Virus record (IMG/VR): IMGVR_UViG_3300024502_000010
Span: 124,001 to 188,000 of that record
Direction: 5' to 3' (one strand)
Length of the DNA: 64,000 nucleotides
The notes under the pieces are model-generated. The model saw only the letters and a program-made list of their open reading frames with translations, ran no database searches and was not told the origin of the DNA. Of this stretch, positions 4,183 through 64,000 are shown piece by piece; the first letter of the stretch is position 1; every line of letters begins with the position of its first letter. Both the position numbers and the translations under genes were made by a program.

Positions 4183-4253
4183 AAGTCCTGCATAACAGAT
4201 AATATAAACATTAGGATTCCAAAAAGTTGGAAGAGAACTAAGATGAGAAGCAT
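4179..4253 (-). CDS. 24-aa hydrophobic micropeptide (MLLILVLFQLFGILMFILSVMQDL)
   Basis: ORF read by hand; coupled to the next ORF. Confidence 0.4.
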   Translation of the reverse strand: MLLILVLFQLFGILMFILSVMQDL

Positions 4254-4807
4254 TTGAGGTTTTCTACTAGGAGTTCTAATTCTTGTAGGGATGCGTCCCA
4301 TTTTAGGGCATTCGCTCTTGAAGATATAACCCAAATATTATCGGGGGTATATCCTTTACCAGGAACCTTTTGATCTAAACTAGGATTTCTTGGATCTCTT
4401 TTATCATTAGTAGATACAAGAGGTATTCCAAGTAAAGGACAAGTTTCTGGAATAATAATATCATCTATAGTTATACTAAATGGAATACCCTTTCTTTTTG
4501 CCCTATGTTGAGCATTATGAAACATACTATATCTTCTATCGTCTTTTTTTAATTCACCTTCTGGTTTCTTTTTAGTTTTATTAAAAGCAATAGTAGTTTC
4601 TCTCCTAACACACCCACAACTAGTAGTTGAACCATTCATAAGACCATATCTCTCGCAAGTTTTTTCTCCACCACATTCACATTTACAAGTTGAATAAACT
4701 CTATTCTTCCCACTCTTAAAGACTACTTCTTCTTTCAGGACAGTAAGTTTTCCAAATTTTTTACCAATCAAAGCACCACAAGGTTTTGATTTATTATTTA
4801 AGGGCAT
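4238..4807 (-). CDS. free-standing HNH-family homing endonuclease
   Basis: N-terminal GKKFGKLTV...CKCECG...TTSCGC module; C-terminal CPLLG..SLDQKVP..GY...NIWVIS.RAN..K nuclease core. Confidence 0.8.
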   Translation of the reverse strand: MPLNNKSKPCGALIGKKFGKLTVLKEEVVFKSGKNRVYSTCKCECGGEKTCERYGLMNGSTTSCGCVRRETTIAFNKTKKKPEGELKKDDRRYSMFHNAQHRAKRKGIPFSITIDDIIIPETCPLLGIPLVSTNDKRDPRNPSLDQKVPGKGYTPDNIWVISSRANALKWDASLQELELLVENLKCFSS

Positions 4808-4900
4808 TATCCTAACTTTGAATATCTATTATTATTTATATTTTATCATACTTTGGGTCTTATGTAAATAAAAAAGACCCCAACAATGAGGTCTTTAAAA

Positions 4901-5962
4901 TCAAAGTGCGTTGCCCCGAGGCAAAACTTCCTCTGGAAAAACAAAATTTTCATGTGGTTGGTCTACGGGAGCCATCCAAGCACGAAGCCCTTCGTTAAGA
5001 AGTATATTCTTCGTGTAGAAAGTTTCGTATTCCGGATTGACGGCTGCTTCAATCTCCTGACTAACAAAGTCGTAAGCACGAAGATTGAGAGCAAGACCGA
5101 TAATCCCGATAGAAGATGTCCAGAGACCCATGACGGGAACAAAGAGCATAAAGAAATGTAACCAACGCTTGTTACTAAAAGCAATTCCAAAGATTTGCGA
5201 CCAGAAACGGTTAGCAGTAACCATTGAATAGGTTTCTTCCTCTTGTGTTGGTTCGAATGCCTTGAATGTATTTGCTTGATCACTATCTTCAAATAGTGTG
5301 TTTTCTACAGTTGCTCCGTGAATAGCACAGAGCAGTGCTCCACCCAGTATACCAGCAACACCCATCATATGAAATGGGTTAAGAGTCCAGTTGTGAAAAC
5401 CCTGAAGGAACAGAAGGAACCTGAAGATAGCAGCAACACCAAAGGAAGGTGCAAAGAACCAACTGGATTGACCCAGAGGGTACATCAGGAAGACGCTCAC
5501 AAACACTGCGATGGGACCAGAGAATGCAATTGCGTTGTAAGGACGGATGCCTACCAGTCGTGAGATCTCAAACTGGCGAAGCATAAATCCGATCAGACTA
5601 AAGGCCCCGTGGAGCGCCACAAAAGTCCATAGTCCCCCAAGTTGGAACCACCTGACGATATCCCCTTGAGCCTCAGGACCCCAGAGCAGAAGAAGAGAAT
5701 GACCCATAGAATCTGCTGGAGTACTAACTGCTGCAGTAAGAAAGTTTGCACCCTCAAGATAGGAACTCGCAAGCCCGTGAGTATACCAACTCGTGACGAA
5801 AGTTGTCCCAGTAATCCAACCACCAAGAGCAAGATAAGCAGTGGGAAAAAGAAGAAGTCCAGACCAGCCAACAAAAACGAAACGGTCTCTTTTAAGCCAG
5901 TCATCGAGTACATCAAACCATCCTCGTTGTTGAATAGGTTGTGAAAGTGTAGAAGAAGTCAT
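4901..5962 (-). CDS. psbD: photosystem II D2 protein
   Basis: Near-identical to D2 ([14 protein letters not shown]...[10 protein letters not shown]); no intron. Confidence 0.99.
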
Positions 5963-6030: not shown

Positions 6031-6153
6031 TTATCCCCAATACATCTGACCGAGAGTGAATAAGACAAATACAAGAACTGTAAATACCATCATACCTACA
6101 CCTGCCCAGATGATCCAGGGTTCCATAGGATGATGTTGATTATTATGAGACAT
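6031..6153 (-). CDS. 40-aa single-pass membrane peptide (MSHNNQHHPMEPWIIWAGVGMMVFTVLVFVLFTLGQMYWG)
   Basis: ORF read by hand; clean TM helix; directly upstream of the psbD promoter. Confidence 0.6.
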   Translation of the reverse strand: MSHNNQHHPMEPWIIWAGVGMMVFTVLVFVLFTLGQMYWG

Positions 6154-6179
6154 AAAAAAAGAGGGTTGTTACACCCTCT
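6154..6179 (-). terminator. Rho-independent terminator
   Basis: AGAGGGT-GTAACA-ACCCTCT followed by T7. Confidence 0.8.
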
Positions 6180-6201
6180 AATTATATCAGTTATTCAGTT
6201 G

Positions 6202-6246
6202 TTATCAACCAATTGAAGGTGCAGTGAGAGCAACAGGAGTTGCTTC
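6202..6246 (-). pseudogene. psbA: orphan 3' end of a second psbA allele
   Basis: GAA GCA ACT CCT GTT GCT CTC ACT GCA CCT TCA ATT GGT TGA TAA = [13 protein letters not shown], matching the D1 C-terminus. Confidence 0.85.
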
Positions 6247-6276
6247 AGAAAACTGAGGATAGGTTTTTATTATTAC

Positions 6277-6304
6277 TTGACTTTTTGATAATTTATGATA
6301 TAGT
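6277..6304 (+). promoter_or_regulatory. sigma70 promoter with extended -10
   Basis: TTGACT-N16-(TGa)TATAGT. Confidence 0.6.
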
Positions 6305-6346
6305 TTCTTAGTGGAAACACACATCACACACATTAGGAGAATATCT

Positions 6347-6550
6347 ATGACACCTTATGAACTTCGATTTGAAATCTTTAAGCAAGCATATAATATGCTT
6401 AATGACCAGTTTAGCATGGAATATGATACTGCTGTTCGTTGGAATGAAGATGAGAACAAAAAAGTAGCAATGGATTATCCAGAGTTTCCAACACTTAATC
6501 AAGTTCTAGAACAAGCAGAAATCATTAATGATTTTGTAAGTTCCAAATAA
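6347..6550 (+). CDS. 67-aa hypothetical protein (MTPYELRFEIFKQAY...)
   Basis: Own promoter, SD AGGAGA and a downstream terminator. Confidence 0.8.
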   Translation: MTPYELRFEIFKQAYNMLNDQFSMEYDTAVRWNEDENKKVAMDYPEFPTLNQVLEQAEIINDFVSSK

Positions 6551-6554
6551 AGTT

Positions 6555-6582
6555 AAAGGAGGGTTTTATCCCTCCTTTTTTA
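6555..6582. terminator. bidirectional terminator
   Basis: AAAGGAGGG-TTTTAT-CCCTCCTTT followed by a T-run, between convergent genes. Confidence 0.8.
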
Positions 6583-7317
6583 TTATCTTTTGTTTCTATT
6601 ATAAGTTGCTCTTACAGCATCAAAAGATACTCTATCCTTTTCCTTTTCATCATCGGGAAGATTTGAATATGATGTATTAGCAAGTTTTGCTCTTCTTTGT
6701 TTCTTTTCTGGTGTTTGGTCTGTACTTGTTTTAGCAGTTCTTGCCCAACCCTGATGAACTGCATCAGCACCTGCTTCTCTTGAAGTTCCACTACCACTTC
6801 TTTCACCTCTTCTAATAGCACGAAGGGCAGCGGCAGCAGATGAACGATTTGCTGCTCTACCGAAAGAACGCTTATCACCAGATGCTCTACCATATCCATA
6901 TCTTTTATCTAATGCAGCATCAGATGCTTTCTCATAAGGACTATCCTCTCTTTCTATAATATTGTCTCTCCACTCTTCACTCATATTCACCATAATTGCT
7001 TCTGCTGCTTGTTGAGTATCAGCATATCCTTCATCAAGTAAGTGTGAAAGAATTAGATCGTAAACATCTACTTCTTCTTTTGCTAAATCAGAATCGACAC
7101 GAACATTTGAACCTGTTCTTACATTTCTTCTTGCTGCTGCCTGATGAGCGCGGCGTCTTGCCATCCAAGCACCACTTATACCACCACTATCTACATCTTG
7201 TGCATCTCTCTTTCTTAACATTCCTTTGACTTTTCTATCAGAGATTTCATCCAGTTGCTGATTTTCAACAACTTCCATATATGCTTCTTGAAGATTGCGA
7301 AGTTCTTGTGCGTCCAT
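6583..7317 (-). CDS. late modular hypothetical protein (cyanophage LLDEGYA-module family)
   Basis: Late box CTAAATA upstream; module YDLILSHLLDEGYADTQQAAEAIMVNMSEEWR shared with the 63027 ORF. Confidence 0.8.
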   Translation of the reverse strand: MDAQELRNLQEAYMEVVENQQLDEISDRKVKGMLRKRDAQDVDSGGISGAWMARRRAHQAAARRNVRTGSNVRVDSDLAKEEVDVYDLILSHLLDEGYADTQQAAEAIMVNMSEEWRDNIIEREDSPYEKASDAALDKRYGYGRASGDKRSFGRAANRSSAAAALRAIRRGERSGSGTSREAGADAVHQGWARTAKTSTDQTPEKKQRRAKLANTSYSNLPDDEKEKDRVSFDAVRATYNRNKR

Positions 7318-7332
7318 TTTTATGAATACTTT

Positions 7333-7695
7333 TTAGTTATTTAGGTATTCTATCATCTTTTGAAGAGTGCTGATGTTGTCTCCTACAAGACCTAATGCAG
7401 TGTTGCAGTTGTTACAGAGAACACCACGAACCTTATTTGTAGAGTGGCAGTGGTCTATACACTTCTTGGTTAGTTCCACATCACATATTTGGCAGTTCTC
7501 ATTCTTCATTAGGTCATTATATTGGTCTTCTGTAAGTTTAAATCTGCGTCTAGCATATTCGTGAGTCTTATAATATTGCCTACGAACTTCCCGTTCACAA
7601 TCCTTACACTTTGATTGAACCCCAGAAGGTCTACTACTTCTTTTAGAGAAACTATCAAGTTCTTTTGTTTCTCCACATCTACTACAAGTTTTCAT
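7333..7695 (-). CDS. endonuclease VII-family homing endonuclease (F-CphI-like)
   Basis: CQIC...IDHCH..NKVRGVLCNNCNTALG Endo VII motif; N-terminal CxxC/CxxC; position downstream of psbA; start ATG at 7695. Confidence 0.88.
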   Translation of the reverse strand: MKTCSRCGETKELDSFSKRSSRPSGVQSKCKDCEREVRRQYYKTHEYARRRFKLTEDQYNDLMKNENCQICDVELTKKCIDHCHSTNKVRGVLCNNCNTALGLVGDNISTLQKMIEYLNN

Positions 7696-7740
7696 TATGG
7701 TATGGAAGTTTGGTATGGAACTATTTATGAATAATACCAT

Positions 7741-7768
7741 AAAAAAAGAGACCTGTAAAGGTCTCTTC
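7741..7768 (-). terminator. psbA terminator
   Basis: AAGAGACC-TTTACA-GGTCTCTT followed by a T-run. Confidence 0.8.
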
Positions 7769-7792
7769 ATTCTTATTCAGTTTTTATAAAAC

Positions 7793-8872
7793 TCAACCGA
7801 TTGCGGGTGCAGTAAGGGCAACAGGAGTGTTGCTAGCAGCAGCAAGATCCAGAGGGAAATTGTGTGCATTCCTTTCGTGCATCACCTCGAGCCCGAGTCC
7901 AGCACGGTTCAGAACATCTGCCCAAGTGTTGAGGACACGACCCTGTGAATCAATGATGGACTGGTTAAAGTTGAAACCGTTGAGGTTGAATGCCATGGTG
8001 CTAACACCAAGAGCAGTGAACCAGATACCAACTACAGGCCATGCAGCAAGGAAGAAGTGCAGCGAACGTGAGTTATTAAAGGAAGCATATTGGAAAATAA
8101 GGCGTCCGAAATAACCGTGAGCAGCAACGATGTTATAGGTCTCTTCTTCTTGACCAAACTTGTAACCATAGTTCTGTGACTCGTTCTCAGTGGTTTCACG
8201 AACCAGTGAGGAAGTAACCAGAGAACCGTGCATAGCACTGAACAGAGAACCTCCAAAGACACCAGCCACACCAAGCATGTGGAAGGGGTGCATCAGGATG
8301 TTGTGCTCTGCCTGGAACACAAGCATATAGTTGAACGTACCAGAGATACCCAGAGGCATCGCATCAGAGAAAGAACCTTGACCGAAAGGATACACCAGGA
8401 ACACAGCAGAAGCAGCAGCCACAGGTGCAGAGTAAGCAACACAGATCCAAGGACGCATACCAAGACGGTATGAAAGTTCCCATTCACGACCCATGTAAGC
8501 GTAGATACCGATAAGGAAGTGGAACACTACAAGTTGGAAAGGACCACCGTTGTAAAGCCACTCATCAAGCGAAGCAGCTTCCCAGATGGGATAAAAGTGC
8601 AGTCCAATCGCGTTGGACGAAGGAATAACAGCACCAGAGATGATGTTGTTTCCGTACATGAGTGAACCAGCAACGGGTTCACGGATACCATCAATGTCCA
8701 CTGGGGGAGCACCGATGAATGCGATGATGAAACAAGTCGTAGCAGCAAGCAGGCAAGGAATCATGAGGACTCCGAACCAACCGACATAAAGACGATTATC
8801 GGTTGATGTGACCCAGTTGCAGAATTGTTCCCAAGTATTCGATTGTCGTTGACGTGAAATTGTAGCAGTCAT
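7793..8872 (-). CDS. psbA: photosystem II D1 protein
   Basis: Full D1 sequence; E130; H332/E333 retained; no intron. Confidence 0.99.
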
Positions 8873-8886
8873 TGTTTTAAGCAGTT

Positions 8887-8992
8887 AGTAAGACCATCAG
8901 GGAAATGGTGGAGATACTATGCTCCCCGCACCCTTAGCGGGGATATGAGAGACGTAATTTATACACCCATAGGTCTCGGTTATCGGGTGTCT
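8887..8992 (-). ncRNA. PhotoRC-II-like structured psbA leader
   Basis: GAGAC...GUCUC, CACCC...GGGUG, CCCCGC...GCGGGG and ACCAU...AUGGU pairings in the psbA 5' UTR; family name from recollection, not a search. Confidence 0.6.
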
Positions 8993-9040
8993 AACAATGT
9001 TAAGGGAACGTTGCGTTCCGTAACATTTGTTTACCTATTT

Positions 9041-63026: not shown

Positions 63027-64000
63027 TCAGTCGTGCTCACCCATTGCTTTTTGCTTACGGAGTTTCTTAGGATTCTTAGTAATTCCACCAGGACCCTCTG
63101 AAGGATAATCGTGGTCGGCACGAGTTCCTACACCGTGAGCAGAACCTGCTCTTGCTCTTTCTCTATCATCGGCAGTTAGACCCTTTCTTGGAGAACCATA
63201 AGCATCCTTTCTGTTGGCAGGATTGGTTCTCCTTTGCATTGCTTTTAAGAATGGCTTTCTCTTTGCAGTCATCTTGGTTTTTAATGCTGCACTATATGCT
63301 TTTGGAGTTTCGCCGTATGAACCTTCTGCTTCAGAAATAATTTCAGATCTCCACTCTTCACTCATATTTGCCATAATAGCGATTGCTGCCTCTTCAGTTT
63401 CAGCATATCCTTCATCGAGCAAATATCCTTTTACAATATCGAACATATCAAATCCAGAAACAATACTTCCTGGCTTTTTGGAACCAGTTGCCTTATTTAC
63501 TGGAGCAGGGGCTGCTGCTGGGGTTGGTTTTAGTGCTGCAACGGCACCACTCTTTACAATAGCATCAGCTTTTGCTTTTTGTTGATCTGGAGCATTACCA
63601 GTTTGATATCCAAATGTCTTTTGCATTAAAGGATTTGGAGTTTTTGGTTTGATTGATTCTGGACCTGCTGCCTTTGTTCCAGGAGCTGGTTTTGCTGCAG
63701 CGGTTGGTGCTGGTTTTGTTGCAGGAGCAGTTGGCGCTGGTTTTGCTGCTGCTGGTCTTGCTGCTGGGGTTGCTGCTGGTCTTGCTGCTGCTGGTCTTGC
63801 TGCTGCTGGTTTTGCTGCTGGTTTTGCTGCTGGTTTTGCTGCTGGTTTTGCTGCAGGGGGTTTTGCTGCTTGCTTTTGGAGATATTCACCAGTTGTAGAG
63901 ACTCTTCTGTTTGCCTCAACACCACTCATTCCAGTTTTCATTAATTTTTGAACTTTTGCTTTACCACCACCAGCAGAAAATGCAGTCATTACAGGTGCTT
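63027..64000 (-). CDS. late modular protein (5'-truncated) with PAAK repeats and LLDEGYA module
   Basis: Frame appears open to the window edge; FDIVKGYLLDEGYAETEEAAIAIMANMSEEWR. Confidence 0.8.
   Translation of the reverse strand, partial: APVMTAFSAGGGKAKVQKLMKTGMSGVEANRRVSTTGEYLQKQAAKPPAAKPAAKPAAKPAAKPAAARPAAARPAATPAARPAAAKPAPTAPATKPAPTAAAKPAPGTKAAGPESIKPKTPNPLMQKTFGYQTGNAPDQQKAKADAIVKSGAVAALKPTPAAAPAPVNKATGSKKPGSIVSGFDMFDIVKGYLLDEGYAETEEAAIAIMANMSEEWRSEIISEAEGSYGETPKAYSAALKTKMTAKRKPFLKAMQRRTNPANRKDAYGSPRKGLTADDRERARAGSAHGVGTRADHDYPSEGPGGITKNPKKLRKQKAMGEHD
63720..63870 (-). repeat. 12/15-bp coding repeats encoding (A)AKP/(A)ARP
   Basis: Tandem TGCTGCTGGTTT / TGCTGCTGGTCT units on the plus strand. 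Confidence 0.9.

What the first reader, a model, noticed from the sequence alone, without database searches (positions are those of the whole stretch)
6202..7830. Fossil psbA 3' end marks a ~1.55 kb endonuclease cassette that replaced the end of psbA
Seen: 1.55 kb downstream of the functional psbA stop there is a second D1 C-terminus ([13 protein letters not shown]-stop-stop), with different codons from the live one ([13 protein letters not shown]). Both are followed by AACTGAATAA and then a terminator. Between them lie the Endo VII nuclease, a 244-aa late gene and an oppositely oriented 67-aa gene with its own promoter. Inference: a cassette carrying a new psbA 3' end, the nuclease and two passenger genes recombined into the last ~14 codons of psbA and stranded the old end. 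The endonuclease would thus act as a vector for unrelated cargo, and the scar gives the exact junction.
Basis: partly seen in the sequence, partly recalled or inferred. Interest (0 to 1): 0.8.

Follow-up and report, generated by a model that had tools for sequence, protein, structure and literature searches.

The report
Stranded psbA tail marks nuclease cassette
A river cyanophage carries the stranded last 13 codons of its photosynthesis gene psbA about 1.6 kb downstream of the working gene end, and the join next to them shows that a homing-endonuclease region plus unrelated genes was pasted into the gene's tail by sloppy break repair, a known kind of event not reported for phage psbA in the papers I searched.

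Summary
Window 6246-6205 (minus strand) is a second D1 C-terminus, [13 protein letters not shown] plus two stops. It is followed, like the live end (7834-7793), by AACTGAATAA and a hairpin terminator. The pair scores about 20 sd above shuffles.

In about 36 distinct related phage contexts, a live psbA ends directly on the fossil's flank (TGATAA, AACTGAATAACTGATATAAT, hairpin, a 40-aa gene, psbD). So the fossil is the old native end.

The right junction is exact. Codons 1-8 of an unrelated 65-aa gene (start decayed to ATA) are fused to psbA codon 347/348 through a 6-nt microhomology, CTGAAG (6248-6243).

The nuclease is F-CphI-like (Endo VII motif). It lies just downstream of psbA in all 33 informative loci, usually without any fossil.

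A second phage lineage (L017) has the same scar and cargo at 95-100% identity, but a different nuclease (about 33% aa) and a different last ~240 nt of psbA. The 244-aa gene is a fusion of two tandem paralogues. Shorter psbA-end remnants (0-2 codons) recur at other junctions.

The best model is nuclease-triggered break repair that is homologous on the left and microhomology capture on the right. The nuclease's role is inferred.

The closest precedent is the fungal mitochondrial endonuclease ORFs that carry duplicated gene C-termini. Interest is moderate.

The parts
7793..8872 (-). Live psbA (D1, 359 aa, no intron). Its last ~240 nt (about 8030-7793) behave as a separately exchanged tract linked to the nuclease.
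   Evidence: ORF and translation. tblastn identity to other phage psbA is 92-98%. Sliding identity to L017 drops from 92-96% to 72-77% at about 8030.
7735..7792 (-). Flank A of the live end: TGA-GTTTTATAAA, AACTGAATAA (7782-7773), hairpin terminator 7768-7745, a T-run and an ATG. It is a diverged homologue of flank B and is typical of nuclease-bearing alleles (TGAGTT..., stem GAGACC...GGTCTC).
   Evidence: The same flank sits upstream of the type-1 nuclease in S-SKS1 and in L159-L178.
7333..7695 (-). Free-standing F-CphI-like homing endonuclease (120 aa). It has N-terminal CxxC pairs and a C-terminal Endo VII catalytic motif. The late-promoter-like box upstream reads CATAAATA here and TATAAATA in relatives.
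   Evidence: Pfam PF02945, E = 5.9e-18. phrog_2633, E = 3.6e-37. 36% identity to F-CphI, with the D-H..H..N motif columns invariant. 87-88% aa identity to the S-SKS1 endonuclease VII. psbA lies immediately upstream in 33 of 33 informative loci.
6583..7317 (-). 244-aa ORF of unknown function. It is a chimera of two tandem paralogues of a large cyanophage family, joined in the shared LLDEGYA..AAEAIMVNMSEEW module.
   Evidence: 449 relatives in IMG/VR, mostly far from psbA. L017 has the two parts as separate genes, 4203-4760 and 4854-5471. No Pfam family and no function from PHROGs or the ESM Atlas. A paralogue lies at window 63452-63111.
6555..6578 (.). Bidirectional hairpin terminator shared by the convergent 244-aa and 67-aa genes.
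6277..6550 (+). The 67-aa gene (6347-6550) with its own sigma-70-like promoter (TTGACT-16-TATAGT, 6277-6304). It was captured from a non-psbA locus.
   Evidence: 197 relatives in IMG/VR. Only the window lineage and the L017 lineage have it near psbA. In L059, L240, L243, L244, L246 and L309 it is paired divergently with an intact 65-aa gene.
6244..6270 (-). Remnant of the 65-aa gene: codons 1-8 plus GAA, reading ATA-AAA-ACC-TAT-CCT-CAG-TTT-TCT-GAA. The start codon has decayed from ATG to ATA. This is the right end of the inserted DNA.
   Evidence: Window 6588-6243 matches L059 2288-2632 at 91%, and the homology stops at 6243. The intact ORF in L059 begins MKTYQQFSEDIEQRR.... Three-way comparison.
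6243..6248 (-). Junction microhomology CTGAAG. It is shared by the 65-aa gene (TTCTCTGAAGAT) and by psbA codons 346-348 (GCTGCTGAAGCA).
6202..6246 (-). Fossil psbA 3' end: codons 347-359 ([13 protein letters not shown]), TGA and TAA. It lies wholly inside the pre-D1 C-terminal extension.
   Evidence: It is collinear with live psbA ends in about 36 distinct relatives. In L017 it has drifted to TASSIG, a Pro-to-Ser change not seen in any live copy sampled.
6151..6208 (-). Flank B, the ancestral psbA downstream element. It holds the promoter-like site TTGATA-16-TATAAT (6208-6181), whose -35 box overlaps the fossil stop; AACTGAATAA (6200-6191); the hairpin 6179-6160; a T-run; and the ATG of the 40-aa gene. 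It is a composite terminator and promoter, PeSL-like.
   Evidence: 11 of 12 matches, the best promoter-like site in the region. In IMG/VR the motif occurs in 69 loci, two of them unrelated chance hits; in most of the others it lies between live psbA and the 40-aa gene.
6031..6153 (-). 40-aa membrane-type ORF, conserved between psbA and psbD. With psbD it forms the downstream homology arm.
   Evidence: phrog_7358, E = 5.1e-17. Present at 60-100% aa identity in most loci.
4901..5962 (-). psbD (D2), the conserved right-hand neighbour. Identity to L017 decays from about 5900 onward.

Best explanation
The ancestral arrangement was psbA, then a composite terminator/promoter (flank B), then a 40-aa gene, then psbD.

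In an ancestor shared (for this tract) by the window phage and the L017 lineage, the 3' end of psbA was broken. The most likely agent is an F-CphI-like Endo VII homing endonuclease carried just downstream of psbA by a co-infecting phage.

The left end was repaired by homologous copying of the donor. This installed the donor's psbA 3' end, its flank A and its nuclease. Copying then ran on through the donor's neighbouring hyperplastic-region genes: two p244-family genes, the 67-aa gene, and the start of a 65-aa gene.

The right end, resected to within the last 13 codons of psbA, was captured by a 6-nt microhomology (CTGAAG). This truncated the 65-aa gene at codon 8 and stranded psbA codons 347-359 in front of flank B.

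Later events, shown by comparison:
- The nuclease plus the last ~240 nt of psbA was swapped for another allele in one of the two lineages.
- The two p244 paralogues fused in the window phage.
- Elsewhere (L011) the nuclease was deleted.

The fossil is non-coding debris, and in L017 it is drifting. The promoter whose -35 box overlaps its stop codon probably still serves the 40-aa gene and psbD.

Shown: the polarity of the event, the exact junction, the ectopic origin of the cargo, and the modular exchange. Inferred: that a nuclease made the break, which nuclease it was, and that the cargo came as run-on copying of the donor's neighbours.
For: 1. The duplicate is real and non-random: z of about 20, and the best match in the window.

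2. The empty site exists. About 36 distinct contexts have a live psbA ending TGATAA + AACTGAATAACTGATATAAT + hairpin + the 40-aa gene + psbD. The fossil with its flank matches them at roughly 90-100% identity.

3. Polarity. The sequence left of the fossil is the 5' end of a 65-aa gene that is intact elsewhere, next to the same 67-aa gene. Homology to it stops at 6243, inside CTGAAG, which psbA alleles also contain. The start codon has decayed.

4. The two psbA ends are different alleles. The live end with flank A matches the nuclease-bearing modules of other phages (83% DNA identity to S-SKS1 over 553 nt; near-identical flank A in L166 and L168). The fossil with flank B matches nuclease-free phages.

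5. The nuclease is F-CphI-like with intact motif residues. It lies about 97 nt after the psbA stop in 33 of 33 informative loci, and it is optional among relatives. F-CphI itself cuts intronless psbA at the intron insertion site (PMC6083498). In relatives, introns sit at codons 334-337, which is 30-40 nt upstream of the junction.

6. Recurrence. Other loci show junctions onto the extreme psbA end that are distinct at the DNA level. The type-1 nuclease ends in ...GGTTGA + flank B in L189 and L175, and in TTGATATAA + flank B in L180. p244-like ORFs end in ...IG*/LG* using ATTGGTTGA in L109, L122 and L135. L151, L086, L011 and L200 show further variants.

7. Modular exchange. Window against L017: psbA 8750-8035 is 92-96% identical; 8030-7735 is 72-77%; the nucleases are about 33% aa identical; 7349 to about 5900 is 95-100%; the outer flanks are about 70%.

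8. The region is present in many DNA runs and in metatranscriptome contigs from the same river system.
Against: - No donor with psbA - nuclease - p244 - 67-aa gene - intact 65-aa gene was found among the loci fetched. Only the best 80 of 197 loci were inspected.
- L017 has the same scar with another nuclease, so the nuclease now present in the window cannot be shown to be the one that made the scar.
- Most insertions of this nuclease leave no fossil. The scar is therefore an occasional outcome, not a signature of the family.
- The cleavage site of this nuclease subfamily is unknown.
- The correlation between nuclease divergence and psbA divergence rises only weakly towards the 3' end (Spearman 0.27 to 0.43).
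- Recombination between terminator/promoter cassettes is known to shuffle genes in T4-type phages without any nuclease (PMC2839356).
Confidence: 0.7

Rival explanations
1. The whole present block (new psbA end, this nuclease, the 244-aa gene and the 67-aa gene) is one cassette that entered in a single event and is carried around by this nuclease.
For: The block is contiguous and is bounded by the two psbA ends. Nuclease-to-p244-like adjacency recurs in other lineages: L199, L200, L202, L109 and L151.
Against: L017 has the same scar and cargo but a nuclease only about 33% identical and a divergent psbA 3' tract. The 244-aa ORF is a secondary fusion of two genes. In most of the type-1 nuclease loci sampled the nuclease has no such cargo: it is followed directly by the 40-aa gene, by psbD or by other genes. 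L011 has the p244 gene without the nuclease or the 67-aa gene.
Confidence: 0.15
2. No nuclease was involved. The insertion arose by the general recombination that shuffles modules between promoter/stem-loop regulatory cassettes (PeSLs) of T4-type phages, for example by integration of a mini-circle between the two flank elements, or by replication-linked template switching.
For: The block is bracketed by two homologous terminator/promoter elements in direct orientation. PeSL-mediated shuffling and mini-circles are documented in T4-type phages (PMC2839356, PMC4122927). The p244 modules are multi-copy and plainly recombine.
Against: The right junction is not inside a regulatory cassette. It lies inside psbA coding sequence and a truncated foreign gene, with only 6 nt of shared sequence. 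PeSL exchange should leave no coding fossil. Junctions cluster at the end of a gene that is a demonstrated homing-endonuclease target in a related phage, and they sit next to such nucleases (PMC6083498).
Confidence: 0.12
3. The second D1 tail is a local tandem duplication, or a functional element kept for its own sake (a small ORF or a regulatory RNA), and not a scar.
For: The 42-aa ORF 6333-6205 is open in both the window and L017. The fossil's stop overlaps a strong promoter-like site. The region is represented in metatranscriptome contigs.
Against: The two tails are different alleles with different flanks, each matching a different set of phages. The ORF's upstream part is the antisense of the 67-aa gene's promoter, and it is closed in L059. 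The L017 fossil carries Pro-to-Ser at a position invariant in live copies, and 5 changes in 24 nt. No Rfam family matches there. Only two lineages have it.
Confidence: 0.03

Closest known systems
F-CphI of cyanophage S-PM2 and its psbA region (free-standing Endo VII-motif homing endonuclease; 'collaborative homing')
   Same: The protein architecture is the same: N-terminal CxxC pairs and a C-terminal Endo VII motif, at 36% identity. The position is the same, immediately downstream of psbA with psbD beyond. The gene is optional among related phages. Relatives of the window nuclease also co-occur with an intron at psbA codons 334-337, as in L162-L164. F-CphI cuts intronless psbA at the intron insertion site (PMC6083498).
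   Different: The window psbA has no intron, so self-protection must come from sequence differences. That was not tested. The window nuclease belongs to a distinct subfamily, closest to the S-SKS1 endonuclease VII (87-88% aa). Neither a stranded psbA end nor captured cargo is present in the S-PM2 locus.
Mobile endonuclease ORFs (mORFs) of fungal mitochondria with duplicated gene C-termini (Allomyces atp6; Glomus atp6, atp9, cox2, nad3)
   Same: The anatomy matches. A foreign C-terminal coding piece joins in frame to the resident gene, an endonuclease gene follows, and the native C-terminus is stranded downstream. The native piece matches relatives that lack the element, and the inserted piece is divergent (PMC3630166; here).
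   Different: Here the host is a phage and the nuclease is of the Endo VII family, not LAGLIDADG or GIY-YIG. The nuclease is a separate gene behind a terminator, not fused in frame. About 1.1 kb of unrelated genes came along, and the right junction lies inside a truncated third-party gene.
Intronless homing by free-standing endonucleases of T4-type phages (SegF, SegG, MobE) and 'nuclease genes at boundaries of genetic exchange'
   Same: The nuclease gene lies between conserved genes and presumably cuts the neighbouring gene in genomes that lack it, with co-conversion of flanking sequence. Here an exchanged tract boundary (7349) coincides with the 3' end of the nuclease gene (PMC10448857; PMC3037559).
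   Different: Classical intronless homing uses homology on both sides and leaves no scar. Here one side is an illegitimate join, which duplicates the target's end and imports foreign genes.
PeSL promoter/stem-loop cassettes of T4-type phages
   Same: Flank B is a near-consensus sigma-70-type promoter directly followed by a terminator hairpin and an ATG. It lies in a variable region, and a diverged second copy (flank A) brackets the insert (PMC2839356).
   Different: The junction that created the fossil lies outside these elements. PeSLs have not been described for cyanophages in the papers read (no mention in PMC4122927).

Membership tests
F-CphI-type (Endo VII motif) homing endonucleases | Endo VII catalytic motif at the C-terminus with the conserved acidic, histidine and asparagine residues | tested here: met
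   PF02945 matches residues 50-121, E = 5.9e-18. In the alignment with F-CphI, the columns D82, H83, H85, C95, C98 and N99 are invariant. F-CphI D101 and H102 are named as catalytically important in PMC6083498.
F-CphI-type (Endo VII motif) homing endonucleases | Free-standing gene beside a conserved target gene, present in some related genomes and absent in others | tested here: met
   psbA lies immediately upstream in 33 of 33 informative loci. About 36 distinct related contexts lack the nuclease.
F-CphI-type (Endo VII motif) homing endonucleases | Site-specific cleavage of the nuclease-free allele, with resistance of its own allele | not testable with these tools
   This needs an in vitro cleavage assay. 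No computation here bears on it.
F-CphI-type (Endo VII motif) homing endonucleases | Association with a group I intron that protects the host allele (collaborative homing) | tested here: not met
   The window psbA is one uninterrupted 359-aa ORF. Some relatives with the same nuclease type do have a split psbA: L162-L164, L182, L184 and L185.
mORF-type 3'-end replacement elements | Duplicated C-terminal coding segment of the host gene lying downstream of an endonuclease gene | tested here: met
mORF-type 3'-end replacement elements | The native (stranded) copy matches relatives that lack the element, and the in-frame copy is a divergent allele | tested here: met
   The fossil with flank B is collinear with live ends of nuclease-free phages. 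The live end with flank A matches nuclease-bearing modules.
mORF-type 3'-end replacement elements | Endonuclease ORF continuous or in phase with the host gene | tested here: not met
   A stop codon, a hairpin terminator and about 97 nt separate psbA from the nuclease gene.
PeSL regulatory cassettes | Strong sigma-70-like promoter combined with a stem-loop terminator in front of an ORF | tested here: met
   6208-6181 reads TTGATA-16-TATAAT (11 of 12 matches), followed by the hairpin 6179-6160, a T-run and an ATG. These are consensus matches only; function was not shown.
PeSL regulatory cassettes | Recombination junctions lie within the cassette (between the -10 box and the ATG) | tested here: not met
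   The junction is at 6248-6243, inside coding sequence upstream of the cassette.

The most novel reading that the evidence does not exclude
Once the old psbA end is stranded, the block (nuclease plus cargo) is flanked on the left by about 1 kb of psbA. On the right it is flanked by the fossil, the terminator/promoter, the 40-aa gene and psbD. That right-hand side matches the commonest nuclease-free arrangement at 90-100% identity.

The scar would then turn a one-off sloppy repair into a reusable two-armed homing unit. With it, a psbA-targeting nuclease could spread unrelated genes among many cyanophage species, with the photosynthesis gene serving as a universal landing pad.

The near-identical cargo-plus-scar tract shared by two otherwise ~70%-identical phages would be the first trace of such spread. 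The recurrent short remnants at other junctions would be further cases.
Probability: 0.3. Interest if true: 0.65.

Novelty: new variant of a known kind. Interest (0 to 1): 0.5.

Why it matters
psbA is the best-known host-derived gene of marine and freshwater cyanophages. Its mosaic evolution and the variable psbA-psbD interval have been noted for two decades without junction-level evidence of how foreign genes get in.

Here one junction can be read to the base. It shows an illegitimate, microhomology-mediated join at the end of a gene that is a proven homing-endonuclease target in a related phage, with about 1.1 kb of unrelated genes imported.

Together with the shorter remnants at other junctions, this makes a concrete proposal. 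Homing endonucleases do not only convert their target's flanks; they occasionally drag neighbouring genes into new genomes. The stranded gene ends can serve as datable markers of such events.

The proposal is directly testable by a cleavage assay and by phage crosses. It also warns that psbA 3' sequences, including the pre-D1 tail, are unreliable for phylogeny or host assignment.

Tried and rejected
- Separate comparison of the psbA 5' and 3' parts. The window psbA is at most 93% identical to any other in the 5' part, and its last 90 nt have no clear partner. No clean donor or recipient could be assigned.
- A Mantel-type test of nuclease divergence against psbA segments. It gave only a weak rise towards the 3' end (r = 0.27 to 0.43). 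I do not lean on it.
- Search for a donor with an intact 65-aa gene downstream of psbA and a nuclease. None was found among the 80 loci returned.
- Search for more lineages with the same junction. IMG/VR gave 7 contigs and JGI metagenomes gave 4 stretches of DNA, all from the same two lineages.
- GenBank phages. The fossil matches only live psbA ends. S-8S29 had a second match; I inspected only the annotation around its psbA and did not locate that second place.
- Function of the 244-aa, 67-aa and 40-aa proteins. Pfam, PHROGs and the ESM Atlas gave nothing beyond 'unknown'. The 244-aa protein is not related to S-PM2 p181.
- Rfam. The only hit is PhotoRC-II upstream of psbA; nothing lies in the cassette.
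- Papers. Zeng et al. 2009 and Millard et al. 2004 are not held, so the exact F-CphI cut position is taken only as 'at the intron insertion site' from PMC6083498.
- Laid contigs. They give presence and rough depth only. A single low-depth RNA-run contig joining 6246 to 7901 hints at a cassette-free relative in the same river, but it is weak.
- Rejected explanations: assembly artefact, in-situ tandem duplication, and a conserved ORF over the fossil. The reasons are given under the rival explanations.


Full report
**What the window is.** The region belongs to a T4-like cyanomyovirus. The same sequence occurs in five IMG/VR contigs of up to 284 kb and in many riverine metagenome and metatranscriptome runs. 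The nearest cultured relatives are the Synechococcus phages DSL-LC02 and DSL-LC03, at about 80-83% identity over about a quarter of the first 25 kb.

On the minus strand the gene order is as follows:
- psbA, 8872-7793.
- Flank A: TGA-GTTTTATAAA, AACTGAATAA, hairpin 7768-7745, T-run, ATG.
- An Endo VII gene, 7695-7333.
- A 244-aa ORF, 7317-6583.
- A bidirectional terminator, 6555-6578.
- On the plus strand, a 67-aa gene (6347-6550) with its own promoter (6277-6304).
- The D1-tail remnant, 6246-6202.
- Flank B: TTGATA-16-TATAAT at 6208-6181, AACTGAATAA at 6200-6191, hairpin 6179-6160, T-run.
- A 40-aa ORF, 6153-6031.
- psbD, 5962-4901.

**Check of the observation.** The duplicate is there and is far beyond chance.
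- The repeat finder gives 36 nt at 86% and 18 nt at 89% identity, in register 1588 nt apart.
- A gapped alignment extends about 100 nt through the stop, AACTGAATAA, the hairpin and the T-run-ATG.
- Its score of 62 compares with 15.2 +/- 2.3 (maximum 28) for shuffles. The fossil is the best match to the live end in all 64 kb.

**Which end is the old one?** The 20-mer AACTGAATAACTGATATAAT from flank B occurs in 69 IMG/VR loci. In the great majority, about 36 distinct sequence contexts after removing duplicates, a full live psbA ends ...GGT-TGA-TAA(A) directly on this motif. The same hairpin, the 40-aa gene and psbD follow.

The fossil with its flank is collinear with these. For example, it matches the L143 flank exactly and reads like the L104/L119 alleles in the coding part. 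None of the cassette-free relatives carries a duplicate.

**The exact junction and the polarity of the event.** The 67-aa gene has 197 relatives in IMG/VR. Only the window lineage and one other have it near psbA. In L059, L240, L243, L244, L246 and L309 it is paired head to head with an intact 65-aa gene (MKTYQQFSEDIEQRR...).

Window 6588-6243 matches L059 2288-2632 at 91%, and the homology stops at 6243. Three sequences side by side:
- 65-aa gene: ...AATAATGAAAACCTATCAACAGTTCTCTGAAGATATTGAG
- Window: ...AATAATAAAAACCTATCCTCAGTTTTCTGAAGCAACTCCTGTTGC
- psbA (L119): ...GCTGCTGCTGAAGCAACTCCTGTTGC

So the first eight codons of the 65-aa gene, with its ATG decayed to ATA, are fused in frame to psbA codon 347/348 through the shared hexamer CTGAAG (6248-6243). 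This is an illegitimate, microhomology-type join between two sequences that are each intact elsewhere. That fixes the polarity: the fossil-bearing arrangement is derived.

The fossil lies entirely within the pre-D1 C-terminal extension (residues 345-359 here). By established knowledge of D1 maturation, that extension is removed after Ala344.

**The nuclease.** The 120-aa protein has the Endo VII motif at its C-terminus (PF02945, E = 5.9e-18; phrog_2633, E = 3.6e-37). It aligns over its whole length with F-CphI of S-PM2 (36% identity), with the CxxC pairs and the D-H..H..N motif columns invariant. F-CphI is an experimentally shown homing endonuclease that cuts intronless psbA at the intron insertion site (PMC6083498).

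Proteins at least 65% identical to the window nuclease were found in 37 further loci. In all 33 whose contig reaches upstream, psbA lies immediately before the nuclease, behind the same flank A and a TATAAATA box. The box reads CATAAATA in the window. S-SKS1, a phage of another genus, shares the psbA end, flank A and nuclease at 83% DNA identity.

Some relatives have a split psbA at codons 334-337. That is 30-40 nt upstream of the junction found here, which is what a break at that site followed by modest resection would give. The cut site of this subfamily is unknown, so this step is an inference.

**Why the single-cassette reading fails.** Four observations count against it.

(a) Most copies of this nuclease have no fossil. 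In L159, L161, L166, L178, L183 and L185 the nuclease ORF runs into the ATG of the 40-aa gene.

(b) L017/L018 belong to a different phage, whose outer flanks are only about 70% identical. They carry the identical 65-aa-stub/fossil junction, the 67-aa gene and the p244 sequences at 95-100% DNA identity from window 7349 to about 5900. Their nuclease, however, is only about 33% identical. Their psbA falls from 92-96% identity (8750-8035) to 72-77% over its last ~240 nt and flank A. So the unit made of the psbA 3' tract plus the nuclease has been exchanged independently of the cargo and scar, with a boundary at the 3' end of the nuclease gene.

(c) L017 has two tandem p244-family genes (185 aa and 205 aa). 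The window's 244-aa ORF is their fusion through the shared LLDEGYA..AAEAIMVNMSEEW module.

(d) L011 keeps flank A, the last eight codons of the nuclease and the p244 gene. It lacks the nuclease, the 67-aa gene and the fossil coding part.

**The phenomenon recurs.** Other loci show joins onto the very end of psbA, in front of flank B, that are distinct at the DNA level:
- The type-1 nuclease ends ...EYLG* on CTCGGTTGATATAA in L189 and L175.
- It ends on TTGATATAA in L180/L181.
- p244-like ORFs end ...SI(I/L)G* on (A/C)TTGGTTGA in L109, L122 and L135, and similarly in L200.
- L151, L086 and L011 show further variants.

The window's 13-codon remnant is simply the longest. The -35 box of the flank-B promoter (TTGATA) overlaps the psbA stop codon. 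Selection to keep that promoter for the 40-aa gene and psbD could explain why junctions pile up just upstream of it. This is speculation.

**Mechanism proposed.** A psbA-targeting nuclease from a co-infecting phage breaks the recipient psbA near its 3' end. The left end copies the donor's psbA end, flank A and nuclease by homology. Where the donor's downstream genes differ from the recipient's, copying runs on through them. The new strand is finally captured on the resected right end by a few bases of homology.

The result is a replaced psbA tail, a nuclease, hitch-hiking genes and a stranded old tail. Later homologous exchanges, using psbA, the multi-copy p244 modules and psbD as arms, then reshuffle the parts.

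Shown: the empty site, the polarity, the junction, the ectopic origin of the cargo and the modular exchange. Inferred: that a nuclease made the break, which nuclease it was, and the run-on copying.

**Rivals.**
- Recombination between terminator/promoter cassettes (PeSLs; PMC2839356, PMC4122927) fits the bracketing by flanks A and B. It does not fit a junction inside coding sequence with only 6 nt of homology.
- An in-situ duplication is excluded because the two tails are different alleles with different flanks.
- A functional small ORF is unlikely. The frame is closed in L059. The L017 fossil has Pro-to-Ser at a position invariant in live copies, and 5 changes in 24 nt against about 3% in the flanks. 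Only two lineages carry it.

**Expression hints.** Logan contigs of two metatranscriptomes cover the whole block.
- Word depth is of the order of 10^4 over psbA, about 10^3 or more over the nuclease, and about 3-5 x 10^2 over the cargo, the fossil and the 40-aa gene.
- Depth in the DNA runs is flat, at about 40 and about 110.
- Contigs give no strand, and other phages' psbA adds to the psbA depth. This shows presence in RNA libraries and nothing finer.

**Comparison with what is known.** The anatomy is that of the endonuclease mORFs of fungal mitochondria, which bring a foreign C-terminus and strand the native one (Allomyces atp6; Glomus atp6, atp9, cox2 and nad3; PMC3630166). The nuclease family and target are those of F-CphI/psbA. 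The idea that endonucleases mobilise cassettes in cyanophages, and that they sit at exchange boundaries, has been voiced before (PMC3037559, PMC10448857).

What appears new is a base-resolved scar in phage psbA, the capture of unrelated genes through an illegitimate right junction, and the recurrence of short psbA-end remnants. I found no report of this in the papers searched. Two key older papers could not be read.

**Verdict.** This is a new variant of a known kind, of moderate interest.

Noticed in passing
window 4238-4807 (-): The 189-aa ORF directly downstream of psbD is a second putative free-standing endonuclease (phrog_3322, E = 1.8e-31, plus Endo VII/HNH families; no Pfam hit). Homologues sit in the same place after psbD in S-SKS1 (47%), L017 (41%), L099 (61%) and L195 (70%). 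psbD may therefore have its own homing nuclease.
   Followed up: partly
window 8909-9002 (-): A PhotoRC-II RNA motif (RF01717, 84 bits, E = 2.9e-14) lies in the psbA leader. It is a known cyanophage psbA-associated element.
   Followed up: no
window 6583-7317 (-); L017 4203-4760 and 4854-5471: The 244-aa ORF is a fusion of two tandem paralogues through a shared ~40-aa module. The module and the N-terminal segment have 3-4 times the word depth of their surroundings in DNA runs (6915-7055 and 7197-7337). Another paralogue lies at window 63111-63452 (-). The family behaves like a dispersed repeat that could guide ectopic recombination.
   Followed up: partly
window 6031-6153 (-): A 40-aa hydrophobic ORF (phrog_7358) is conserved between psbA and psbD in most related phages. 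Its function is unknown. It may be a small membrane or photosystem-associated peptide.
   Followed up: no
window 6151-6208 (-): The best promoter-like site of the region (TTGATA-16-TATAAT with TG) abuts a terminator hairpin, so a transcript starting there would lack the hairpin's 5' arm. This is a terminator-then-restart composite like the PeSLs of T4-type coliphages. A 38-nt near-copy (95% identity) lies just after psbD in S-RIM2 (L003 2501-2538).
   Followed up: partly
L011 470-620: Here the nuclease gene has been deleted cleanly. Flank A's ...TTTTTTTATGCTATAATG is joined to the last eight codons of the nuclease (ATTGAATACCTAAATAAC TAA), ahead of the p244 gene. This is an example of nuclease loss.
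   Followed up: partly
window 6246 joined to 7901 (RNA run X4, one contig, depth 4): A low-depth contig links a fossil-like psbA tail to upstream psbA sequence and skips the cassette. It probably comes from a cassette-free relative living in the same river, that is, a potential recipient allele.
   Followed up: no
L162-L164, L182, L184, L185, L190-L192, L199, L205: Relatives with the same or related nucleases have psbA split at one to several places (for example codons 334-337, 298, 231, 185). This indicates introns beyond the single S-PM2-type site.
   Followed up: no
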